DNA of 62,979 nt, counting the filler, from Reticulomyxa filosa (lineage: Eukaryota; Protista; Foraminifera): assembly GCA_000512085.1 (NCBI GenBank). It is 17 parts of 17 records of this genome, joined end to end, with 100 filler letters (N's around TTAATTAATTAA, not from the genome) between each part and the next. Parts side by side here need not be neighbours in the genome. Positions count along the whole stretch, not along the records: positions 1 to 14,033 come from ASPP01008888.1; 16 more parts are not named here. One strand, 5' to 3'. Of the stretch, positions 43 through 14,033 are shown in pieces. Each line of letters starts with the position of its first letter. Positions within the stretch are counted from its first letter, which is position 1. Position numbers and translations under genes: made by a program. The notes under the pieces are model-generated. The model saw only the letters and a program-made list of their open reading frames with translations. It did no database searches and was not told where the DNA came from.

Positions 43-1403
43 TGACATGTCCAACATACAAGACATTGAAATGAAGATTAAACTCGAGTTCTTAGAGGCC
101 ATTCGTGGCTGTGCCAAAACTCTCGCTTTTGATAGGTACGAAATTTGCACACACTGCCAAGGGTCTTCCTACGAACCCAAGGCCTTTGAAAATGCCTGCC
201 AAAAATGCCAAGGCACTGGCCAACTACCTTCATTTGGACAGAATTTCATGCAACATATCCCTTGCTCCAACTGCCATGGCTCGGGCAAAATTGTCATGAA
301 GTGCATTGAATGTCATGGCGATGGGCACATCCTTTGTCGCAAACAATTCACTGTCACTTTGCCAAGCGGCATTAAACCCAATGAACGTGTCAAAATTTTC
401 AATCAGGGTCACATCTTGCGCAATGCAGTTTGTTTTATTTAAAAAAAAAAATATATATATATATACACATATATGTATATAGAAGGAACAGAAAATTCTG
501 TCCAAGAAATTTCTGGAATTTTCTTGACACTGAACTGTGAATCCCGTTTTATATGTCAAAATAATAATAATGATAATAATAACAATAATAATGCTCCAAC
601 AGAATAACGGACAAGAAGTAAAGCAAGGGAATCTATGGATTGAATGTGAAGTGAAAGAACACGAACATTTTGTACGAGTTGGGAACGATATTCATGTAAC
701 AGCACATATCCCAATCTCTTTGGCATTAATCGGAGGCTCATTTGTGATTCCAACCATAAATGGGCCTACAGTGATGAGCATATCCCCTGGCGCAACCTCA
801 GGAGACTACAAAGTGTTAGAAGGAAAGGGTGTACTTTTAAACACAACAGCCGACAATGTACAACGCAACATCGAAGAGAACGATGAGAAAAAAGGCAATC
901 AAATTGTTCATTTGGAAGTCGATTTGCCAAACATAATGGAAATGCCAGAAGAGCAAAGACGATTGCTACATAGTTATGCCAAACTGGACAAAGAGCCCTA
1001 TGTTTGCAAGCCGAGTTCATTCGCCGTGCTCAAGCACATGAATGACTGGGACACTTTGTTTGGAGGGAGAAAAAAAAGATTTAAGAAAATGCATAGCTTT
1101 GGCATCGATTTGAATAATGAAAAACAAAGTAATGCAACCATGAATGAATATTGGGGCCAAAAAATAAAACAAATGTCGAGTGATTTTGATAATAGTTTTG
1201 ATCAGCATTCCGATTCACACAACAACGATGATAAAATAGACTGGGAAGACTTTGAACTTAGCTTTGATGAGCCAAAGAGCAACACAACACAGACACACAA
1301 CCAAAGTAATACAAACGAAGAAGCCGATGACAATTCTCAAACCAAAACACAAGAATTAAGGTTTAACGGTGTCATCGGAGATGACGAATCTGGAAAAGTA
1401 TAA
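43..1403 (+). CDS. Type I DnaJ/Hsp40 chaperone, 5'-partial (zinc finger plus C-terminal domain), intron 428-602
   Basis: Four CxxCxGxG-type motifs (CTHCQGSS, CQKCQGTG, CSNCHGSG, CIECHGDG), then VTLPSGI, GNLWIE, HEHFVRVGNDIH, ISLALIGG and GNQIV, typical of DnaJ_C. The GT..AG intron joins the two ORFs in frame. Confidence 0.9.
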
Positions 1404-1725
1404 TAACCTCGTTTTTTTTCGATTGCTTTTAGTTTTTTCTTTTCGAAAAAATTTATATTAAAAAAAAAAAAAACAACAAAACTATCAAAGCTTGGCTTTT
1501 GCAAAACGTTTTGATTTTTAGTCCATCGCAAAAGCATTATTTTTTGTGTGTCGAACTTATTCTTAATAAAAAGAAAAAGAGATTATCTTACAAATAAGGC
1601 TGATTCCCTTATCCCACAACGACCTCGACAATTTTTTGTATGAGCAATATTTAAAAAAAAAAAAGAAAACAAACAAAATTTGTCTTAGTTTCCGTTCTTT
1701 TTTTAAGATACATTTGTTCGCATGC

Positions 1726-2656
1726 TTACCACCCATTTCCACCTTCGCCGCCTTCACCGCCTTCGCCCCCTTCTCCACCCCCGGCGGCGGTATTTCCCTC
1801 TGCAGTGATAATCTCCCCTTCGCCAGGGGTGAGCATGTCGTCCTCCTCCATCACAGCATTATCACCAGAGGGGGCATTAGCATGCGATTTTGGCAGTTTG
1901 TTGGCATTGTGTAGGTTGGGGTGTGTTTTGTACAATTCCTCCAACTCCAAATCTACATCATTATCGTCTTGTTTGTCCTTAGTCTTAGCATTCTTTTTGT
2001 TATTGTTATTGTCGACTTTGGGCGAAGCGATTCGAATTTGAACCACTTCGGGTTCCTCATCGCTCTTGCTTTCTTCCTTGCGTTTCTTTTCTCCCTTGTT
2101 CAGCAGCGCCGGCGCGACAAGGACAGGCGCAACAGCCGCGTTGTTTGCAGGCTGCGCCATAACCAAGTACGTCTGTCCGTTGATCACAACCTGTTGCAGC
2201 ACCGGTTGTTGTTGTTGTTGTTGTTGCACAGGGATGAGCATGACCGGCGGCGATTGTCCAGCACCTGCCGGATTGAGAGCCGGCATAGCCGAGATGACAT
2301 TAGCAGCAGAAGCAGCAGGGACTGGTGAAGCACGAGGCGAAGCTGCAGGAGAGGCCGAGCGCGAAGAAGAATAGGGTACAGGTGCATCTTTGGGACTACT
2401 TTGAGCAGGGTGGTTATTACGTTTCGAGTCGACTTTGGTTTTGACATCGATCCGTCCCAATTGCGCTTGCACTTGTGCTTGTGGTTGTGGTTGCACTTGC
2501 GCTTGTGCTTGCGCTTGCGCTTGTGCTTGTGGTTGTGACTTTATTGGTCCCTCATCATACTCTTCTCCATTGAGAGTATCTCTTGGGTTACCCTCCTCGG
2601 CAATGGCATCTTGCAAACTTTTTTGATTGTTTAGTTTACTATTATTTTTCTTAAAC

Positions 2657-2693
<37 letters not shown>

Positions 2694-3555
2694 GATTGCT
2701 ACTGGAAAATTCACTTGTCGATTTTGCGGTGATCATCTTGTGCTTCTCTTTGCTCTTTCGTAGCCAACGCTGATAATAGTACACTGCGATAACGCAACAG
2801 ATCAAACCGAACAACACGATAGGCACCAAGATACCTGCGCCAATGTGAATACTCGTATCGCCTCCCCCTGTCCCTCCCGACTTGTTCGCTTGCAGTGTGC
2901 ACGACACATTATATTTGTAGTATGTTCCGAATTTCCGTTGCGACTTCGAATTGTATGCCGTCACGCCCGAGTCGTTATAGTCGTTTCTGCATCCATCAAT
3001 GTACATCACAAATTCATCTAATGACGAAGAGTTACTACTGCCGCAGTCGATTGTATTCAAAAACACTTGCTTTGTCATCACTGCTGCTCCTTTGCTTTCG
3101 TCGTATTCACATACAAACTGAAAACTGCTCGACGAATTGCGGTTGCACACTCCAAGGGTCACTGGGTAATTGTTGAATTCATACATGTCGTAGTCGCATG
3201 TTGTGTCGGCGCTACTTTGCATCGCAAACGACGTATACTGCGCGTAACAGCCAGTGTTGCCATCGCATCTGTACGCTATCCCTGACGAATGCGTATATGT
3301 CTGCTGCTGCTGGAGATTGTCTTTGCTGCAACCTACGCCTTTATACACTTCCAACGTTACCGTGTCCTTCTTCTTGTCGCATTTGAAGTTGTAACTAAAT
3401 GTTGATGATATCGTTCGGTCGAAACACACGTCCGGTGCATAGTTATCTCCTTTGTACGTCACATAATTACATGTCGAACTTTGACTTTCAACCAACACGC
3501 AACTGGCTAAAAAAAAAAAAGCGAGCAATGTAAAAGATTGATGCAATTTTATCAT
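1726..3555 (-). CDS. Single-pass type I membrane protein: signal peptide, Cys-rich ectodomain, one TM, low-complexity cytoplasmic tail
   Basis: 609-aa ORF. Hydrophobic N-terminus FTLLAFFFLASCVLVES, about 200 aa rich in Cys/Tyr, TM ILVPIVLFGLICCVIAVYYY followed by basic residues, then poly-N, (QA)n, poly-Q and (GGE)n tracts. Confidence 0.8.
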
Positions 3556-7349: not shown

Positions 7350-7755
7350 CTTTTATTTATTGATTTTGGGGTATTATTATCAATTTCCCAGAGTTTTTTT
7401 TAAATATTTTTTTTTCTAAGGAGTTTTTTTAAGTGTACCAGAACCACAAATGTATGGACAAACACAAGCTTGATAAAATGTAAAAAACAAGTACAATTAT
7501 ACTAATGATTTTATCTTGTAAAAAGTGCAACATTTTTACCAGATGAACAATCAAATTGTGATATTGATATAAAACCAAGTGAAGCAACAAATACAAACTT
7601 GCATGATTTCTGTATTGAATGTAGTTAAGTATGATAACTGTATTAAACTAAAGAGTTTATTCTAACAGTTGTAAACCAAAAATACTTAACATAAATATGT
7701 TAATTATTTTATTCAATTTACTTAAACAAATTTTTTATGATTGGAAAAAACGATA

Positions 7756-9144
7756 CTATCCCCAAATACAAATTGGGCCCTTGCATGAACCATAACACAA
7801 ATTAACACCACAGGTATTATTACTATTACCTTTTCGGTGGTTTTTAATTGTAGGAATTTAATACATAATATTCCATTTTCTTCATCCTTATTTCCATTGA
7901 TTACATGCAATTCACTTTTATTTGATCGAATATCCCAAAATCGAATTGTATTATCAATTGATCCAGAACATATTACATTTGAGCTACAACCAATTTCAGT
8001 ATTATTGACTACAAATGGTGAGTATTCAACAGCATACACATAACTTGTATGTCCTTTGAATACTTGAATTTTCTTACCAGATCGAATGTCACATAAACAA
8101 ATATTTTTATCAGATGATCCAGATAATATTGTATTTGCGCCACCAATAATTCCTAATTCATTTGATCCATATTTTACACTCCACACTGTATGTTTGTGCT
8201 CATTGAGCATAATGAGTTGTTTGGTTGTTTCTATATCCCATAATCGAATGGTATTATCCCATGATCCAGAACAAATGGTATATCCATTACCACCAATCAC
8301 ACCAATAATATTATTACTGTTGTTGCTATTGCTTTGCAATGGTGAAATGTCAACACACCAAATACCATCTTCATGTCCATTGAAAACATGTAATGATTTG
8401 GATGCTTCAATATCCCATAAACGAATAGTACTGTCATGTGATCCAGAACATAAATATCTACTACCATTAAATGATGAGAATTCAATGCCACAAACACCGG
8501 CAGTATGTCCATTGAATACTTGGAATTGTTGATTATTTTCAAAATCCCAAAAGCGAATAGTTTTGTCATTTGATGAAGAACAAATGATGTTACGGTGATG
8601 CTTATAGTAATAATATAATGAAAATTTTGCGCAATACACTGAATTTGAATGCCCATTGAATGATTGAATTAGCTTGTTGTTCTCAACATCATATACACAA
8701 ACTGTGTTATCATATGATGCAGAACAAAGTAAATATCTACTACCAAATATTGAATAATCAATATTCCATACATAATCGGTATGCTCACAGAAAGTTTTAA
8801 GTAATTTAGATGATGAACGAAATATATCAAGCATGAAGAAGATAGAAACCTATGTTATAATCAAATACATTTTTAAATATTTTGTTTATCATTGAATTAA
8901 ACATGAAAAACAAGAAAACATAACATAATTCGCAACAAGTTTGTCAAAATCACGTATCCATCCTAATTTAATGTTTAATATTCGAACCCAATGTTGAACA
9001 ATTAATTGAATTTCCTCTTTTTCTAACTAATTCAATCAAATATTACATATGATAAAAACTAAAAGCAGCTACCTTTCAAAAATATTTGCTAAAGCTTACC
9101 AATGAAAGTTGTGTTGCGGCTTGTTTTTCATTGTTGGTGGTCAT
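7756..9144 (-). CDS. Lineage-expanded WD40-repeat protein. Exons 9144-9100, 9026-8925 and 8849-7756, with one frameshift near 7840
   Basis: About 6 GH..CSGSxDxTIRxWD repeats and the family signature IGVIGGNGYTICSGS. The alternative frame restores the family C-terminus NLCYGSCKGPICIWG*. Two upstream phase-0 GT..AG exons. Confidence 0.88.
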
Positions 9145-9762: not shown

Positions 9763-12335
9763 ATGGGTAATCAAAACACAACTCCCTTTCAAAGTTTAAA
9801 GGCTTTACCCACTCCACTTTCTCAATCTCAATGTGTGCTATATAAACACGAACTTCTAATTTGTGGAGGTTACAACCAAAGAACTTGTTATTCTTATCAT
9901 ACAATCAAAAATGAATACATGAATATCTGCTCGTATCCAAATAATGTTAAATTAGATGGACACTGTGTAGTGAAACTGATAGATAATAACAACAAAGATA
10001 GTAATGAAATCACGTTGTTATCTTTTGGTGGAGATAAAAATAATCGACATACATTGGTAATGAAATATGTAAGTGTTTGGAGTAATGATAACAATAATGA
10101 CAATGAAATTAATACATTAAACAATTACAATAAATGGATTCCTTTTACAGATAATCATAATAATCCGATTGTCATTGGAGGAGATAAAGATGCATATCAA
10201 GGAGCGCGTGGATTGATTGGTGGAAAAAATAATAATTTGTTATTTATTACTTACTTTCATAAAAATATTAGTGTATTTGATTTAAATAAATTTCAATTTA
10301 TTAAACATGATAATTTACCAACAGATTATATTGGTTATCATTGCTTTGTATCAAAACCAGAAATGATAAAAAACAATAAAAATTATGAAATGATATTATT
10401 TTGTAAAAAGACAGGATTATCAATTATATATGATGAAGATAATAACATTTTTCAATTTAACCAATTATCTGTTTTTGATGATATTTCATCATTTCGTAAT
10501 TATGCATATCTATGTATCAATGATATTATCTTACTCTTTGGTGGAAGTTATTTGGATGTTGTTTCAAGTCAGTACACAAATATTCAATTCGAGAAAACAA
10601 ATGGATGACATTTCAAAACACTTTATCAAATCCATTGTGTCATTGTGTTGCAATATTAAATGAAGATAATGCGTATATACATATTATTGGAGGATTGAAT
10701 GACAATACTAAGTCTGTGTTAACTCATACAAAAACGAAAGTGAGTGAATGGTTGAATGAAGAAGAAATTAAAAAGGAATTGAATTGAAAGTGAAAAAAGA
10801 AGAGAATAAAACAGTAAAAAAAGAAGAAAATAAAGTAAAAAATGATAATATTTTTTTTGTTGATTTGAAATTGTGCAAATGCAAATTCGTTTTTTATTTT
10901 CTTGAAATAGGACATGAAAGAGAAAGATGAACAAATAAGAAAGAAAGAACAAAGCGAAAATAATATTAATGATATCAATGATATCAATGTTATAAATATA
11001 TTTTCTTTTGTCTTTTTTTTTGTATTGAATATATATTTAAAAAAAAAAGGAAAAAATAAATGGATGGAATGGTGGAATCAAAGAGAACAAAAAGACAAAA
11101 CAGAAATAATTGAAAAGTTTAAAATAATGTCAAATGAACAATTTGGATTATGGTTATTGAATGAATGCAAATGGAAAAATGAGATCACAAAAGATGATAT
11201 TGATCCTATTCGTTTTTTACTTAATACTTATATTAGTTTTGTTATAACAAATCAAGATAATAAAGAAGATGAAGTTAATTAATTATATTATTTTTGATTG
11301 AATGAAAACAATAAATATATATTATATACATATATATATAAATAGTTAATAGCATATGTGATAATGGATGAAAAAAAAAAATTGATAAAAATGAAAGAAT
11401 TAACATTTGAAGAACTTCTTCGACAAACTTATAATTGTTTAGAATCAAAATCTTTTCAAAAAATTAACAAAGAAAATTTAAAACTACAGTTAGTCGATAT
11501 AAAGAATAATATTATTGAATCAGATGAATCTGTAAAGAAAGAATTTGCAAATAACAATGAACCTATATTTAAAATTATTTGGACTTCATTTCAACAACAA
11601 ACAATACTTGGAAAAACAAAAACAATAAAAAATGCATTGGTGATAATGATTGCTATAAGTGAATATGATGATAATAATATATGGAAAAATCTTAAGAATG
11701 TAAAAGAAAAGGATATACATAATTTTAAACAGTTATTTGAACAAGAATTAAATTATGAAATTGTATATAATCAATCTCCAAAAATGACAAAACAAGATGT
11801 TCAAACATTTTTGGCCAAATTAATTGTAAACTATGAACTTCATGAAAATAGTCATAAATATGATGGATTAATAATTATTATTTGTGGACATGGAGAAAAT
11901 GGAAATATGTTAGTAACAAGTGATGGAAAAGATGTATCAATTGATAGAATACGTTCATCATTTAATTGTCATGAAATGGAATCATTTAAAGATTTTCCTA
12001 AAATTTTTATTATTGATGCTTGTCGTGGTGAAGGTATTCCAAAAACTCATGAAATTGTAAAAAGAGGAAATGATATAACATATGGTCACAATGATGATGG
12101 ATTTTTAGTGATTTGGTCAACTACAAAAGGACATCAAGTAGCTGATTTATCATTATTGAGCGAATGTATGAAAAATGTTGTCAAGTCAAAATATAAGAGT
12201 AGCTATCCATTTAAACAAATGTTGCAAGATATTAGAACAGAAATAAGAAGCAATAAAAGTAGTGAATGGTATTGTGTAGAAAGTCAAGATACCACAGATT
12301 ATGACATTATTTTCCAACAAAGAAAATCTATGTAA
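9763..12335 (+). CDS. Kelch-like beta-propeller + Trp-rich domain + PB1-like domain + caspase-family (paracaspase-like, C14) protease. Exons 9763-10834, 10911-10988, 11050-11273 and 11346-12335
   Basis: GG-containing blades (LLICGG, LLSFGG, LIGG, LLFGG, HIIGG). Catalytic dyad IICGHG and IIDACRG. Phase-0 GT..AG introns link the ORFs. The model needs three single-A insertions in A-runs (about 10567, 10772 and 11052). Confidence 0.75.
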
Positions 12336-12391: not shown

Positions 12392-13413
12392 TCACCAAAC
12401 ACGAATGGGACCTTTGTATAAATCATAATATAAAATGACCCCACAATAATCATTTATTTTTTCTTTATTCAATTTCTTCTTTTTCAGTGATATAAATTTA
12501 ATGCATAATATTACATTATCTCCTTGATCATGTACAATTTCTCTTATTTGATCGAATATCCCAAATCAAATTGTATTACATTTGAATTATCTCCAATCTC
12601 AATATTATTTATTACAAATTGTGAATATTCAACAGACTATACATAATTTGTATGTAAATTTACTATTTTGGTTCGAATGATAAAATACAATATCATGTTT
12701 GTTTAGATCTCGAATAGAAAAATTTTGATTTTGATTTTTGTCTATCTTTCCAACATTTTGAGTAATAATTTATATACTTCCATCATTGGGACCTCTTTTT
12801 TTATTTATGTTCAAAAATGATCCTCTGTCAGTGATAGACAATTCTTTTCATCATTGAAAATTGTTGAACCAACCACTGTTACACAAAAATTTTTATCTTT
12901 TATCTTTGGAGAAATTACTTTCCTTCACTTTTAATATTTTTCCTTTAAAATTGCAACTATTTTTTGAATTCGAATTTGATTTATTCAAATATTTTCTTCT
13001 TCTTATCCTCCTCCTAATTTTATTCCTTCATTTGATTACCTTTTTTTCAAATCAAATTGTCGAGGACAAATTACTAATAATTCAGACATCAATTTTCTCA
13101 TAGTTTTACCTTGCAAAAATTCGCAATGATCATGTTGTTGAATTGGACATTTTCCATTATTCTGTTTCAAATATTTTTGTAAACATTCTTCTCTAACCAA
13201 ACAAACTTGCTCTTCATTCTCGTGTTCACCACAATTCAATTCCATTGCATTATTTACAATTTGATTGCAAATACAACAAATTAAAGTATTCAGTCTTTGT
13301 GCTTCATTTGTCAAGGAAATCCATGATTTATTATAACACTCTGAAAGAGAAAAAACTGTCCTTTTATTTTCTTTAAGTTTTTCTTCTCTTGTCTTTGTTT
13401 CAAATAAGGACAT
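12392..13413 (-). pseudogene. RING-like/TRAF zinc finger fused to WD40, degraded and internally deleted
   Basis: LICCICNQI...CGEH...CLQKYL...CPIQQHDHC...ICPRQF, then SCNFKGKI after a shift. WD40 debris at 12392-12660 (HTNYV*SVEYSQF, WDIRSNK, LCIKFISLK, KGPIRVW*). Confidence 0.75.
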
Positions 13414-13743: not shown

Positions 13744-14033
13744 TCATCCCCAAAAACAAATTAAATTTTTTGTACCATAACATAAATTAACACAGCTATT
13801 GCCATTTGATTTTTTTTCATTGTTGTTTAATCTCTTTTTCAATTCTATAAATTTAAGACATAATACTTTTTTATTTGTATTTATCACATACAATTCATTC
13901 TTATTTGACCGAATATCCCAAAAACGAATTGTTTTATCATCTGACCCAGAACATATCACATTTGAATTACCATCAATAACTTCACTACCGTTCTTTATAA
14001 CAAATGGTGAATATTCAACACACGTTACGTCAT
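13744..14033 (-). CDS. WD40-repeat protein, 3' end only (same family as 7756-9144)
   Basis: VEYSPF...NVICSGSDDKTIRFWDIRSNK...NLCYG...ICFWG*. Cut by a linker. Confidence 0.85.

What the first reader, a model, noticed from the sequence alone, without database searches (positions are those of the whole stretch)
9763..12335. Myristoylated kelch-like propeller fused to an oligomerisation-type domain and a caspase-family protease
Seen: four ORFs join through phase-0 GT..AG introns into one protein. It has an MGNQNTT start (Gly2, Thr6), a GG-blade propeller, a charged linker, a Trp-rich domain, an 80-aa segment ending LVDIKNNIIESDESVKKEF.....FKIIW that resembles the acidic motif of PB1/CIDE-N beta-grasp domains, and a protease with intact GHG and DACRG. 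Established: caspase-family enzymes are activated by induced proximity and PB1 domains polymerise. Inference: a single-chain membrane-tethered sensor-oligomeriser-protease, an architecture I do not know from characterised proteins.
Basis: partly seen in the sequence, partly recalled or inferred. Interest (0 to 1): 0.8.

Follow-up and report, generated by a model that had tools for sequence, protein, structure and literature searches.

The report
Kelch–PB1-like–caspase fusion gene of Reticulomyxa
This is an already annotated gene (RFI_12261) of the foraminifer Reticulomyxa filosa, one copy of a large family that joins a kelch propeller, a small helical domain, a PB1-like domain and a caspase-like protease in one chain; the architecture is real and uncharacterised, but this copy has three frame breaks.

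Summary
The window is R. filosa contig ASPP01008888.1. The finding's span, 9763-12335, equals the public gene RFI_12261 (806 aa).

The one-protein reading is supported by intact paralogs. At least 20 public models hold kelch, beta-grasp and caspase together, and 74 of 90 caspase models carry the beta-grasp.

Only the 11274-11345 join is a confirmed GT..AG intron. The kelch and linker part has two 1-nt frame breaks (10561-10566 and 10770-10775). The Trp-rich exon needs a third correction (A-run 11051-11056). I could not map reads, so assembly error versus pseudogene stays open.

It is a beta-grasp whose best matches in three libraries are PB1 domains, then CIDE-N. No sequence profile detects this.

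The protease is closest to animal caspases (Z about 22, against MALT1 18 and metacaspases 12-16). Its His/Cys dyad is intact. The residues that bind the P1 aspartate are not conserved: Asp replaces Gln, and an invariant [RK]-G sits in the inter-subunit loop.

The MG start occurs in only 33 of 106 family N-termini. Sensor, oligomeriser and protease roles are inference.

The parts
9763..10560 (+). Exon 1, first part (frame 1): Met-Gly-Asn-Gln-Asn-Thr-Thr start and kelch-type propeller blades (about five GG-motif blades by eye).
   Evidence: ORF list and translation. Identical to residues 1-261 of the public protein P0069. Weak Pfam kelch hits here, clear ones in paralogs.
10561..10566 (+). Frame break 1 (frame 1 to frame 0) inside a kelch blade, next to the TTT run 10562-10564. 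The blade continues as ...KSVHKYSIRENKW in the other frame.
   Evidence: Three-frame translation. tblastn of paralog P0006 switches frame here. DNA alignment to the intact paralog shows a 16-nt (not 3n) length difference.
10563..10769 (+). Exon 1, second part (frame 0): last kelch blade and the start of the charged linker (...KVSEWLNEEEI).
   Evidence: 61% identity to P0006 residues 64-130.
10770..10775 (+). Frame break 2 (frame 0 to frame 2) in the A5 run 10770-10774.
   Evidence: 1-nt gap against intact paralog L001 at this spot. Frame 2 then reads GIELKVKKEENK..., matching the paralog's GIELKIEKKEDE.
10775..10834 (+). Charged Lys/Glu linker (frame 2).
   Evidence: Aligns with the linker of P0060 and P0006.
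10835..11049 (+). Intron zone before the Trp-rich exon. Phase-0 GT donors lie at 10835 and 10859 (the latter homologous to the paralog's donor), and the only acceptor is AG 11048-49. It is either one intron of 191-215 nt, or two (10835-10910 and 10989-11049) around a 78-nt Lys/Glu/Asn mini-exon at 10911-10988.
   Evidence: Sequence. Alignment to L001, whose single intron lies here. No read evidence was obtainable.
11050..11273 (+). Trp-rich exon, predicted as a four-helix bundle (KWMEWWNQ...). Frame break 3: A6 at 11051-11056 where the intact paralog has A7, so the exon is 1 nt out of phase with the acceptor.
   Evidence: AlphaFold model mde0d1140b4a9: helices 2-11, 15-27, 30-40, 49-71, pLDDT 65-86 in 10-residue blocks. 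No Pfam family.
11274..11345 (+). Intron, 72 nt, GT..AG, phase 0. This is the one confirmed splice.
   Evidence: 24-codon gap in tblastn of P0006. Homologous intron with conserved ends in L001.
11346..11588 (+). PB1/CIDE-N-like beta-grasp domain (81 aa). It has a conserved basic beta1-beta2 hairpin and a near-invariant I-I-E-S-D-E acidic patch at beta4/alpha2.
   Evidence: Two AlphaFold models. Foldseek top hits are PB1 of p40phox, KIAA0049 and NBR1. VIA-align: MEKK3 PB1 Z 9.0, then NBR1, Par6, p62 and DREP3 CIDE. The ESM Atlas shape search returns PB1 families.
11589..12332 (+). Caspase-like (Peptidase_C14) domain. Key codons: His 11889-11891 (GHG), Asp 12015-12017 and Cys 12021-12023 (DACRG), and the invariant Arg-Gly 12063-12068 in the disordered loop between the large- and small-subunit-like halves.
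   Evidence: Pfam PF00656 E 1.2e-19. Caspase-3 by profile, 2.9e-11. Foldseek caspase-8, -7, -3 and -9 at E 3e-11. VIA Z 20.8-22.7 for caspases. Column counts.
12333..12335 (+). Stop codon TAA.

Best explanation
The locus is RFI_12261. It is one copy of a multigene family so far seen almost only in Reticulomyxa filosa. Family members are single-chain proteins with five parts in order: a kelch beta-propeller, a charged linker, one or two small Trp-rich helical bundles, a PB1/CIDE-N-like beta-grasp domain, and a caspase-like cysteine protease.

Shown here: the domain order, the folds, the intact His/Cys dyad, the recurrence in paralogs, and the conserved intron positions.

Inferred mechanism: the Trp-rich, beta-grasp and protease parts form a fixed effector cassette. 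It is wired to interchangeable N-terminal binding modules (mostly kelch, also TPR and a TRAF-like zinc finger). Binding or clustering through the N-terminal module, together with beta-grasp-mediated self- or hetero-association, brings protease domains together. They then dimerise and activate as initiator caspases do, possibly with self-cleavage at the invariant [RK]-G in the inter-subunit loop. The S1 pocket probably does not select aspartate and may prefer a basic P1 residue.

As assembled, this copy carries three 1-nt frame breaks at short homopolymers. I lean slightly towards assembly undercalls in an intact gene, but I cannot exclude decay.
For: Identity and annotation.

Fusion is real:
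- Paralog P0060 has kelch and linker in one open 1080-nt exon, followed by Trp-rich and beta-grasp/caspase exons with no independent start.
- Loci L003 and L004 are collinear without frame breaks.
- 'Kelch gene + caspase gene' pairs annotated 61-146 nt apart are the same gene split at the conserved intron.

Recurrence: among 237 collected proteins, 90 have the caspase domain, 74 of these also have the beta-grasp, and 20 have kelch, beta-grasp and caspase.

Other N-terminal partners, with seamless junctions: TPR in RFI_04677 and a TRAF-like zinc finger in RFI_37412.

Folds:
- PB1-like beta-grasp in two models and three libraries.
- Caspase Z 20.8-22.7, against MALT1 18-18.7 and metacaspases 12-16.5.

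Conserved residues: His 28/31, Cys 29/31, Asp in place of the caspase Gln 30/31, [RK]-G 31/31 and 30/31 in a loop with pLDDT about 36.

Assembly-error lean:
- All three breaks are single-base shortenings at homopolymers relative to the intact paralog.
- There is no in-frame stop elsewhere in about 2.2 kb of 25% GC coding sequence.
- The neighbouring WD40 gene on the same contig has the same kind of break in an A4 run, just before its conserved C-terminus.
Against: - No transcript or read evidence could be obtained, so expression, splicing and the three breaks are unverified.
- The closest paralog locus, L005, has an 8-nt indel in its kelch part, which is unlikely to be a sequencing error. So decayed copies do exist in the family.
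- Breaks per locus are 0, 0, 0, at least 3 and 3, which is heterogeneous rather than uniform noise.
- An 11-A run inside the beta-grasp exon is in frame, so homopolymer calling is not uniformly bad.
- Oligomerisation is untested. No sequence profile links the beta-grasp to PB1 or CIDE-N. The canonical PB1 beta1 lysine is missing. Structural Z-scores for PB1 (8-9) are only 1-2 above generic ubiquitin-like folds.
- What the kelch module binds is unknown.
- The P1 preference is read from alignments only. The loop carrying the second caspase arginine is four residues shorter, and its alignment is ambiguous.
Confidence: 0.6

Rival explanations
1. This copy is a pseudogene. The three frame breaks are real mutations and no functional protein is made from 9763-12335. 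The architecture is then a fossil of an intact family member.
For: There are three frame breaks within 500 nt. The family is large and highly paralogous. Locus L005, the closest relative of this copy's protease part, has an 8-nt indel and further breaks in its kelch part. The break at 10561-10566 sits at a run of only three T, a length that consensus sequencing rarely miscalls. A much longer A11 run nearby is in frame.
Against: Each segment stays open in its own frame for 74-329 codons in 25% GC DNA. The catalytic residues and every near-invariant family column examined are intact. With three neutral indels one would expect some nonsense substitutions, and none is seen. All breaks are single-base shortenings at homopolymers, and a neighbouring unrelated gene shows the same defect, which points to contig quality.
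Confidence: 0.3
2. There are two units rather than one. The kelch part is a separate or decayed gene. The product actually made starts at an internal ATG (10914, or 11064 in KW-M-EWW) and comprises only the Trp-rich, beta-grasp and protease domains.
For: All three breaks lie upstream of the ATG at 11064, while the 1.27 kb downstream is pristine. The public annotation calls many such short models (P0001, P0008) and about 100 stand-alone kelch proteins. From 10914 the frame is open through the 61-nt intron-like stretch to 11273.
Against: In intact paralogs the Trp-rich exon begins upstream of that Met with conserved K-W and has no start of its own. The gap between the 'kelch gene' and the 'caspase gene' (61-146 nt) is the conserved intron. 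Three random breaks all falling in the first half has a chance of about 1 in 8, so the pattern is not significant. The read-through stretch VINIFSFVFFFVL is typical translated T-rich intron.
Confidence: 0.12
3. The beta-grasp domain is not an oligomeriser. It acts as an inhibitory pro-domain packed on the protease, or as a ubiquitin-like or Ras-binding-like docking site for another protein. Activation would then not depend on PB1-type polymerisation. This is compatible with the architecture and rivals only the mechanism.
For: No PB1 or CIDE-N sequence signal. The canonical type-B beta1 lysine is absent. Ubiquitin, SUMO, RBD and FERM-F1 domains score Z 7-8, close to PB1 at 8-9. The domain always sits within about 10 residues of the protease. 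Family members such as P0221 lack it.
Against: PB1 tops every structure search, in two models and three libraries. The acidic I-E-S-D-E-D patch at the beta4/alpha2 position of the PB1 OPCA motif is near invariant, and a conserved Lys/Arg cluster lies on the beta1-beta2 hairpin. These are the two complementary surfaces PB1 and CIDE-N use.
Confidence: 0.35

Closest known systems
Animal initiator and effector caspases (peptidase family C14A: caspase-8, -9, -3, -7, CED-3, Dronc)
   Same: Best sequence and structure matches: caspase-3 profile E 2.9e-11, Foldseek E 3e-11, VIA Z 20.8-22.7 over about 200-220 residues. It has the His/Cys dyad in G-H-G and x-A-C-R-G contexts. Large- and small-subunit-like halves are joined by a disordered loop. 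An N-terminal non-catalytic region could recruit or cluster the enzyme.
   Different: There is no death-fold (CARD or DED) pro-domain. A Trp-rich four-helix bundle and a PB1-like beta-grasp take its place. A kelch propeller sits in the same chain. Asp replaces the Gln of QACRG in 30/31 members. The column aligned to the first P1-binding Arg is P/K/E, and the loop with the second Arg is 4 residues shorter. The conserved site in the inter-subunit loop is [RK]-G, not Asp-x.
PB1 domains (p62/SQSTM1, NBR1, p40phox, Par6, aPKC, MEKK2/3, MAP2K5)
   Same: The fold and topology match: beta-beta-alpha-beta-beta-alpha-beta, about 80 aa. PB1 is the top hit in PDB by Foldseek and by VIA (Z 8.1-9.0, rmsd 1.9-2.8, 72-75 residues) and in the ESM Atlas. 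There is an acidic S-D-E-D-type patch where the OPCA motif lies, and a conserved basic hairpin.
   Different: No match to Pfam PB1 in any of 22 members, and none by profile against PDB sequences. The first half of the OPCA motif (D-x-D/E-G-D) is not conserved. The beta1 lysine is absent. An extra short helix follows alpha1. I know of no PB1 domain placed directly before a caspase-family protease (own knowledge).
CIDE-N domains (DFF40/CAD, DFF45/ICAD, CIDE-A, FSP27, Drosophila DREPs)
   Same: A beta-grasp of the same size with Z 7.2-8.1 (DREP3, CIDE-A, Drep4, FSP27, DFF40/45). It is a charge-complementary oligomerisation module tied to a cell-death effector (established knowledge).
   Different: It ranks just below PB1. 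No Pfam CIDE-N signal. The partner enzyme here is a protease, not a nuclease.
Paracaspase MALT1 and metacaspases (C14B)
   Same: An acidic residue two positions before the catalytic Cys (D-x-C) and a conserved basic residue in the processing loop recall these Arg/Lys-specific enzymes. This rests on established knowledge of their S1 pockets, recalled and not re-derived here.
   Different: Structurally more distant than caspases: MALT1 Z 18-18.7, metacaspases 12-16.5. No p20-p10 insertions of the metacaspase type. The sequence context is A-C-R-G as in caspases.
Kelch-repeat substrate adaptors (KLHL12, KLHL20, KLHDC10)
   Same: The family profile of the N-terminal domain hits these solved kelch propellers (E 1e-5 to 2e-3). 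Pfam Kelch_1 is above its cut-off in paralog P0060.
   Different: No BTB/BACK or F-box partner. The matches cover only the last two blades. This copy by itself scores below the Pfam cut-offs.

Membership tests
Peptidase family C14 (caspase/metacaspase/paracaspase fold) | Match to the family profile above the curated threshold | tested here: met
   PF00656: 71.3 bits against a cut-off of 21.4, E 1.2e-19, profile positions 4-229 of 233.
Peptidase family C14 (caspase/metacaspase/paracaspase fold) | Catalytic His and Cys in place | tested here: met
   His182 (G-H-G) and Cys226 (A-C-R-G) of exon 3, aligned to the caspase-3 dyad. Conserved in 28/31 and 29/31 paralogs.
Caspases proper (C14A) | Closest structural and sequence relatives are caspases rather than para- or metacaspases | tested here: met
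   VIA Z 20.8-22.7 for caspase-3, -8, -9, -4, CED-3 and Dronc, against 18-18.7 for MALT1 and 12-16.5 for metacaspases. All top Foldseek and HMM hits are caspases.
Caspases proper (C14A) | P1-aspartate pocket (Arg179, Gln283, Arg341 in caspase-1 numbering; textbook knowledge) | tested here: not met
   Gln is replaced by Asp in 30/31 members. The column aligned to the first Arg is P15/K9/E3. The loop holding the second Arg is 4 residues shorter in the HMM alignment. This is alignment-based and the loop alignment is ambiguous.
Caspases proper (C14A) | Death-fold (CARD/DED) pro-domain in initiators, and Asp-x processing sites in the inter-subunit linker | tested here: not met
   The upstream domains are a four-helix bundle and a beta-grasp. 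The conserved linker site is [RK]-G.
PB1 domain | Ubiquitin-like beta-grasp fold of about 80 residues with PB1 as nearest structural neighbours | tested here: met
   pLDDT is 85-95 over the domain.
PB1 domain | Match to the Pfam PB1 profile or to PB1 sequences | tested here: not met
   No PF00564 hit in 22 members at E up to 10. The profile against PDB sequences gave only RACK1 noise at E about 1.
PB1 domain | OPCA acidic motif (type A) and/or conserved beta1 Lys (type B) | tested here: inconclusive
   The second half of an OPCA-like motif (I-I-E-S-D-E-[DA]-V) is near invariant. The first half is not conserved. There is no Lys in beta1, but a conserved R/K cluster lies on the beta1-beta2 hairpin and beta2.
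PB1 domain | Head-to-tail homo- or hetero-oligomerisation | not testable with these tools
   Needs biophysics on the expressed domain.
CIDE-N domain | Fold and family profile | tested here: inconclusive
   Z 7.2-8.1 to DREP3, CIDE-A, Drep4, FSP27 and DFF40/45, within 1-2 units of PB1 and of generic ubiquitin-like folds. No Pfam hit.
Kelch beta-propeller | Kelch repeat profiles; six-bladed propeller | tested here: inconclusive
   This copy: Kelch_6, Kelch_2 and KLHDC2-type hits at E 0.013, below the cut-offs. Paralog P0060: Kelch_1 at 25.7 bits against a cut-off of 20.1. Family profile against KLHL12 and KLHL20 at E 1e-5.
N-myristoylated proteins | Met-Gly start with small or uncharged residue 3 and Ser/Thr at position 6 | tested here: met
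   M-G-N-Q-N-T-T at 9763. This is the motif only.
N-myristoylated proteins | Gly2 conserved among homologues; actual lipid attachment | tested here: not met
   Gly2 is present in 33 of 106 aligned family N-termini, against Ser2 in 40 and Ala2 in 10, and in 4 of 13 caspase-fused members. Attachment itself is not testable here.

The most novel reading that the evidence does not exclude
Reticulomyxa (and perhaps other Foraminifera) runs an NTPase-free, single-chain counterpart of apoptosome or inflammasome logic. Dozens of paralogous proteins couple interchangeable binding modules (kelch, TPR, TRAF-like zinc finger) through a polymerising PB1/CIDE-N-like domain to a protease. That protease has the caspase fold but a para/metacaspase-like preference for basic P1 residues and self-processes at an invariant [RK]-G. 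The system would serve immunity, self/non-self recognition on cell fusion, or controlled severing of parts of the giant syncytial cell.
Probability: 0.2. Interest if true: 0.8.

Novelty: new variant of a known kind. Interest (0 to 1): 0.5.

Why it matters
True caspase-type proteases are usually treated as an animal invention. The R. filosa homologues are already cited as the one protist exception and are used as outgroups in caspase trees (PMC5982838, PMC10959488, PMC10565124). None of those papers, nor any paper in the searched library, mentions what the protease is attached to.

This work adds three points:
- The protease almost always follows an unrecognised PB1/CIDE-N-like domain. It is often preceded by a kelch, TPR or TRAF-like module in the same chain. 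This is a recruitment and sensing solution different from death-fold adaptors.
- The family is large: 90 caspase-domain models were collected here. Its two unnamed domains gave only 77 hits among 1.84 billion representative proteins, and 18 of the 20 looked up were R. filosa.
- The P1-Asp pocket is not conserved. Calling these proteins 'caspases' in evolutionary arguments may therefore be premature.

All three points can be tested with recombinant domains from intact paralogs.

Tried and rejected
- The genome search 'own' holds no genome for this window.
- Rfam found nothing in the window.
- Pfam found no family for the Trp-rich or beta-grasp segments, either singly or across 22 members. A profile of these two domains against PDB sequences gave only RACK1 at E about 1, which I take as noise.
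- The ESM Atlas feature search for the Trp-rich domain gave nothing usable, and its structure rows are generic small helical bundles. I therefore do not claim it is a new fold.
- Rejected partners. HSP70 (P0180) and WD40 (P0057) fusions have intron-like junk between the parts and look like merged gene models.
- Rejected splices. The 26-nt and 23-nt 'introns' of the public CDS delete conserved blade residues and are far below the 87-nt average intron. The read-through of 10989-11049 gives a Phe-rich stretch that paralogs lack.
- No canonical GT donor in any phase joins in frame to the AG at 11048-49 (checked by hand).
Window exons were used one by one by reference. The only joined sequences used were database proteins such as P0069 and P0060.
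- The Glöckner et al. 2014 genome paper is not in the library, so the sequencing chemistry could not be checked.
Full report
**Source of the window.** The caspase-type ORF (11358-12332) finds 59 relatives, and all named ones are Reticulomyxa filosa RFI_* proteins. A search seeded with paralog P0006 returned P0069, 'hypothetical protein RFI_12261', 806 aa, on a contig of exactly 14033 nt. That contig, ASPP01008888.1 of GCA_000512085.1, is identical to the window. It carries a called gene at exactly 9763-12335 (+).

**What is in the sequence.** Every listed feature is present:
- MGNQNTT at 9763.
- GG-motif kelch-type repeats.
- A Lys/Glu linker.
- A Trp-rich segment.
- An 81-aa segment ending FKIIW.
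- A Peptidase_C14 domain (E 1.2e-19) with G-H-G and D-A-C-R-G.

Kelch identity is weak on this copy (E 0.013). It is clear in the family. Kelch_1 is above its cut-off in paralog P0060, and a 20-member profile hits the KLHL12, KLHL20 and KLHDC10 structures.

**Gene structure.** The intact paralog P0060 (L001:3001-5421) has three exons. The first holds kelch plus linker (residues 1-360, one open frame). The second is the Trp-rich exon. The third holds the beta-grasp and the protease. The two introns are about 65-70 nt.
- The window shares the second intron: 11274-11345, 72 nt, GT..AG, phase 0, with conserved ends.
- Frame break 1 lies at 10561-10566, inside a kelch blade.
- Frame break 2 lies at 10770-10775, in an A5 run.
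- Frame break 3: the Trp-rich exon behind the only acceptor (AG 11048-49) has A6 where the paralog has A7.
- The intron before the Trp-rich exon is either one intron from 10835 or 10859 to 11049, or two introns around a 78-nt mini-exon.
- The public CDS masks the breaks with 26-nt and 23-nt 'introns' and reads through 61 nt of T-rich sequence. The average R. filosa intron is 87 nt (PMC13746701).

Its 'three A-run indels' is close to the truth.

For assembly error:
- All three breaks are single-base shortenings at homopolymers.
- There is no in-frame stop or loss of a conserved residue anywhere else.
- The neighbouring WD40 gene has the same defect in an A4 run, just before its conserved C-terminal motif.

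For decay:
- Breaks per locus are 0, 0, 0, at least 3 and 3 in five loci.
- The closest paralog locus, L005, has an 8-nt indel in its kelch part.
- An A11 run in the same gene is in frame.

I put an intact gene at roughly 0.5-0.6.

**Is the fusion real?** Yes, for the family.
- Of 237 proteins collected, 90 carry the protease, 74 of those also carry the beta-grasp, and 20 carry kelch, beta-grasp and protease in one model.
- 'Kelch gene' and 'caspase gene' pairs with consecutive locus tags lie 61-146 nt apart on the same strand. They are collinear with P0060. The annotation split them at the conserved intron.

**The two unnamed domains.** AlphaFold2 was run on a 22-paralog alignment (mean pLDDT 83.8). 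It gives a four-helix bundle for the Trp-rich part and a beta-grasp for the next 81 residues.
- Foldseek against the PDB ranks PB1 domains first: p40phox, KIAA0049, NBR1, Cdc24, Par6, then Par3-NTD, DFF40/45 CIDE-N, and ubiquitin or SUMO. Best E is 4e-3 and probability 0.99-1.0.
- VIA-align against 48,161 chains ranks MEKK3 PB1 (Z 9.0, rmsd 1.9, 72 aligned), the 2o2v chain B PB1 domain (MAP2K5–MEKK2 complex), NBR1, Par6 and p62, then DREP3 CIDE (8.1). Generic ubiquitin-like folds follow at 7-8.
- A second model, built from the window's own exon 3 with a different alignment, gives the same PB1 list for residues 1-81.
- The ESM Atlas shape search returns PB1 families: plant NLP, TFG, Bem1/Scd2, Cdc24 and sequestosome-1.

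No sequence method sees this relationship. Column counts show a near-invariant I-I-E-S-D-E-[DA]-V patch where the second half of the PB1 OPCA motif lies. They also show a conserved R/K cluster on the beta1-beta2 hairpin, but no beta1 lysine. Oligomerisation remains an inference. The helical bundle has no informative match, and it was never searched on its own.

**The protease.** Mean pLDDT for the beta-grasp plus protease model is 83.6.
- Caspases dominate. Foldseek gives caspase-8, -7, -3, -9 and -6 and CED-3 at E 3e-11 to 1e-9.
- VIA gives Z 20.8-22.7 for caspases, 18-18.7 for MALT1 and 12-16.5 for metacaspases.
- The family profile hits caspase-3 at 2.9e-11.
- His and Cys are conserved (28/31 and 29/31).
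- The Gln of QACRG is Asp in 30/31 members.
- The column aligned to the first P1-binding Arg is P/K/E.
- The loop that carries the second Arg (S-W-R in caspase-3) is four residues shorter.
- The disordered loop between the two halves (pLDDT about 36) has an invariant [RK]-G: 31/31 basic and 30/31 Gly.

From textbook knowledge, para- and metacaspases use a D-x-C acidic pocket and cleave after Arg or Lys. I therefore suspect a non-Asp, possibly basic, P1 preference. This is an inference from alignments.

**Distribution and partners.** A profile of the two unnamed domains, scored against 1.84 billion representative proteins, found 77 hits at E up to 1e-3. Of 20 looked up, 18 are R. filosa. One is an unnamed ENA protein and one an unnamed JGI metagenome protein.

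Besides kelch, the cassette follows TPR repeats (RFI_04677, seamless junction) and a TRAF-like zinc finger (RFI_37412). The HSP70 and WD40 'fusions' look like merged models.

**Myristoylation.** The motif fits (G2, T6). However, Gly2 occurs in only 33 of 106 aligned family N-termini, against Ser in 40 and Ala in 10. Among caspase-fused members it occurs in 4 of 13. At best it is a sub-family trait and it is untested.

**Literature.** R. filosa caspase homologues are known. They are grouped with animal caspases (Klim et al. 2018, PMC5982838) and used as outgroups (PMC10959488; PMC10565124). No paper in the library combines Reticulomyxa with kelch. None of the passages I read (those mentioning Reticulomyxa) refers to the domain architecture.

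**Verdict.** The architecture and the PB1-like fold hold up. The membrane tether, polymerisation and induced proximity are not shown, and 'caspase' needs the caveat about the S1 pocket. This is a new variant of a known kind, of moderate interest. The particular copy may be defective.

Noticed in passing
window 7429-8834 (-), break near 7780-7800: The neighbouring WD40-repeat gene (Pfam WD40 E 7.7e-41) loses its conserved family C-terminus ...GNSNNTCGVNLCYGSCKGPICIWG* to a 1-nt frame shift in an A4 run (…ACCGAAAAGG…). The public model instead extends it with another exon. This is the same kind of defect as in the finding's gene, and it hints at contig-level homopolymer undercalls.
   Followed up: partly
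window 13039-13413 (-), annotated gene 12392-13413: The N-terminus of the downstream neighbour is homologous (37% identity, E 8e-29) to the RING/TRAF-like zinc-finger module of RFI_37412 (P0202). In that protein the module is fused to the same Trp-rich and caspase cassette. Pfam finds nothing on the window's 125-aa piece.
   Followed up: partly
window 13744-14033 (-): The C-terminal end of another WD40 gene of the same expanded family (…ICSGSDDKTIRFWDIRSNK…NLCYGTKNLICFWG), cut by the contig edge.
   Followed up: no
window 47-1597 (+): A DnaJ-type chaperone gene: CXXCXGXG zinc-finger domain (E 4e-10) and DnaJ_C (E 2.7e-16) in two ORFs. The 5' part is apparently cut by the contig start.
   Followed up: no
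window 1726-3555 (-): A 609-aa ORF in the GC-richer part of the window (up to 53% GC). It has a Cys-rich N-terminal region, one hydrophobic stretch, and long Gln/Ala/Pro/Asn low-complexity runs. No Pfam family matches.
   Followed up: no
L003:2722-5742, L004:2287-5535, L005:2528-5258: The public annotation splits three paralogous kelch-caspase genes into a 'kelch gene' and a 'caspase gene' only 61-146 nt apart. The gap is the conserved intron before the Trp-rich exon. Counts of stand-alone kelch and caspase genes in R. filosa are therefore probably inflated.
   Followed up: yes
L003:6442-9742 (-) and L001:1-639 (-): Paralogous kelch-caspase genes sit next to a 1795-aa NACHT plus HEAT-repeat gene (L003) and a TPR_12/NPHP3-type TPR gene (L001). 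These are other repeat-rich, signalling-type families.
   Followed up: no
L001:6257-6798 (+): A second kelch-family gene start (67-70% identical to residues 6-154 of P0060) lies about 840 nt downstream of the intact paralog. This suggests tandem arrays of the family.
   Followed up: no
P0052 (JGI metagenome, 243 aa) and P0235 (ENA, 344 aa): These were the only two of the 20 hits I looked up that come from outside the R. filosa assembly. P0052 has the beta-grasp followed by the start of the protease (38% identity). It is perhaps from a related freshwater foraminifer.
   Followed up: no
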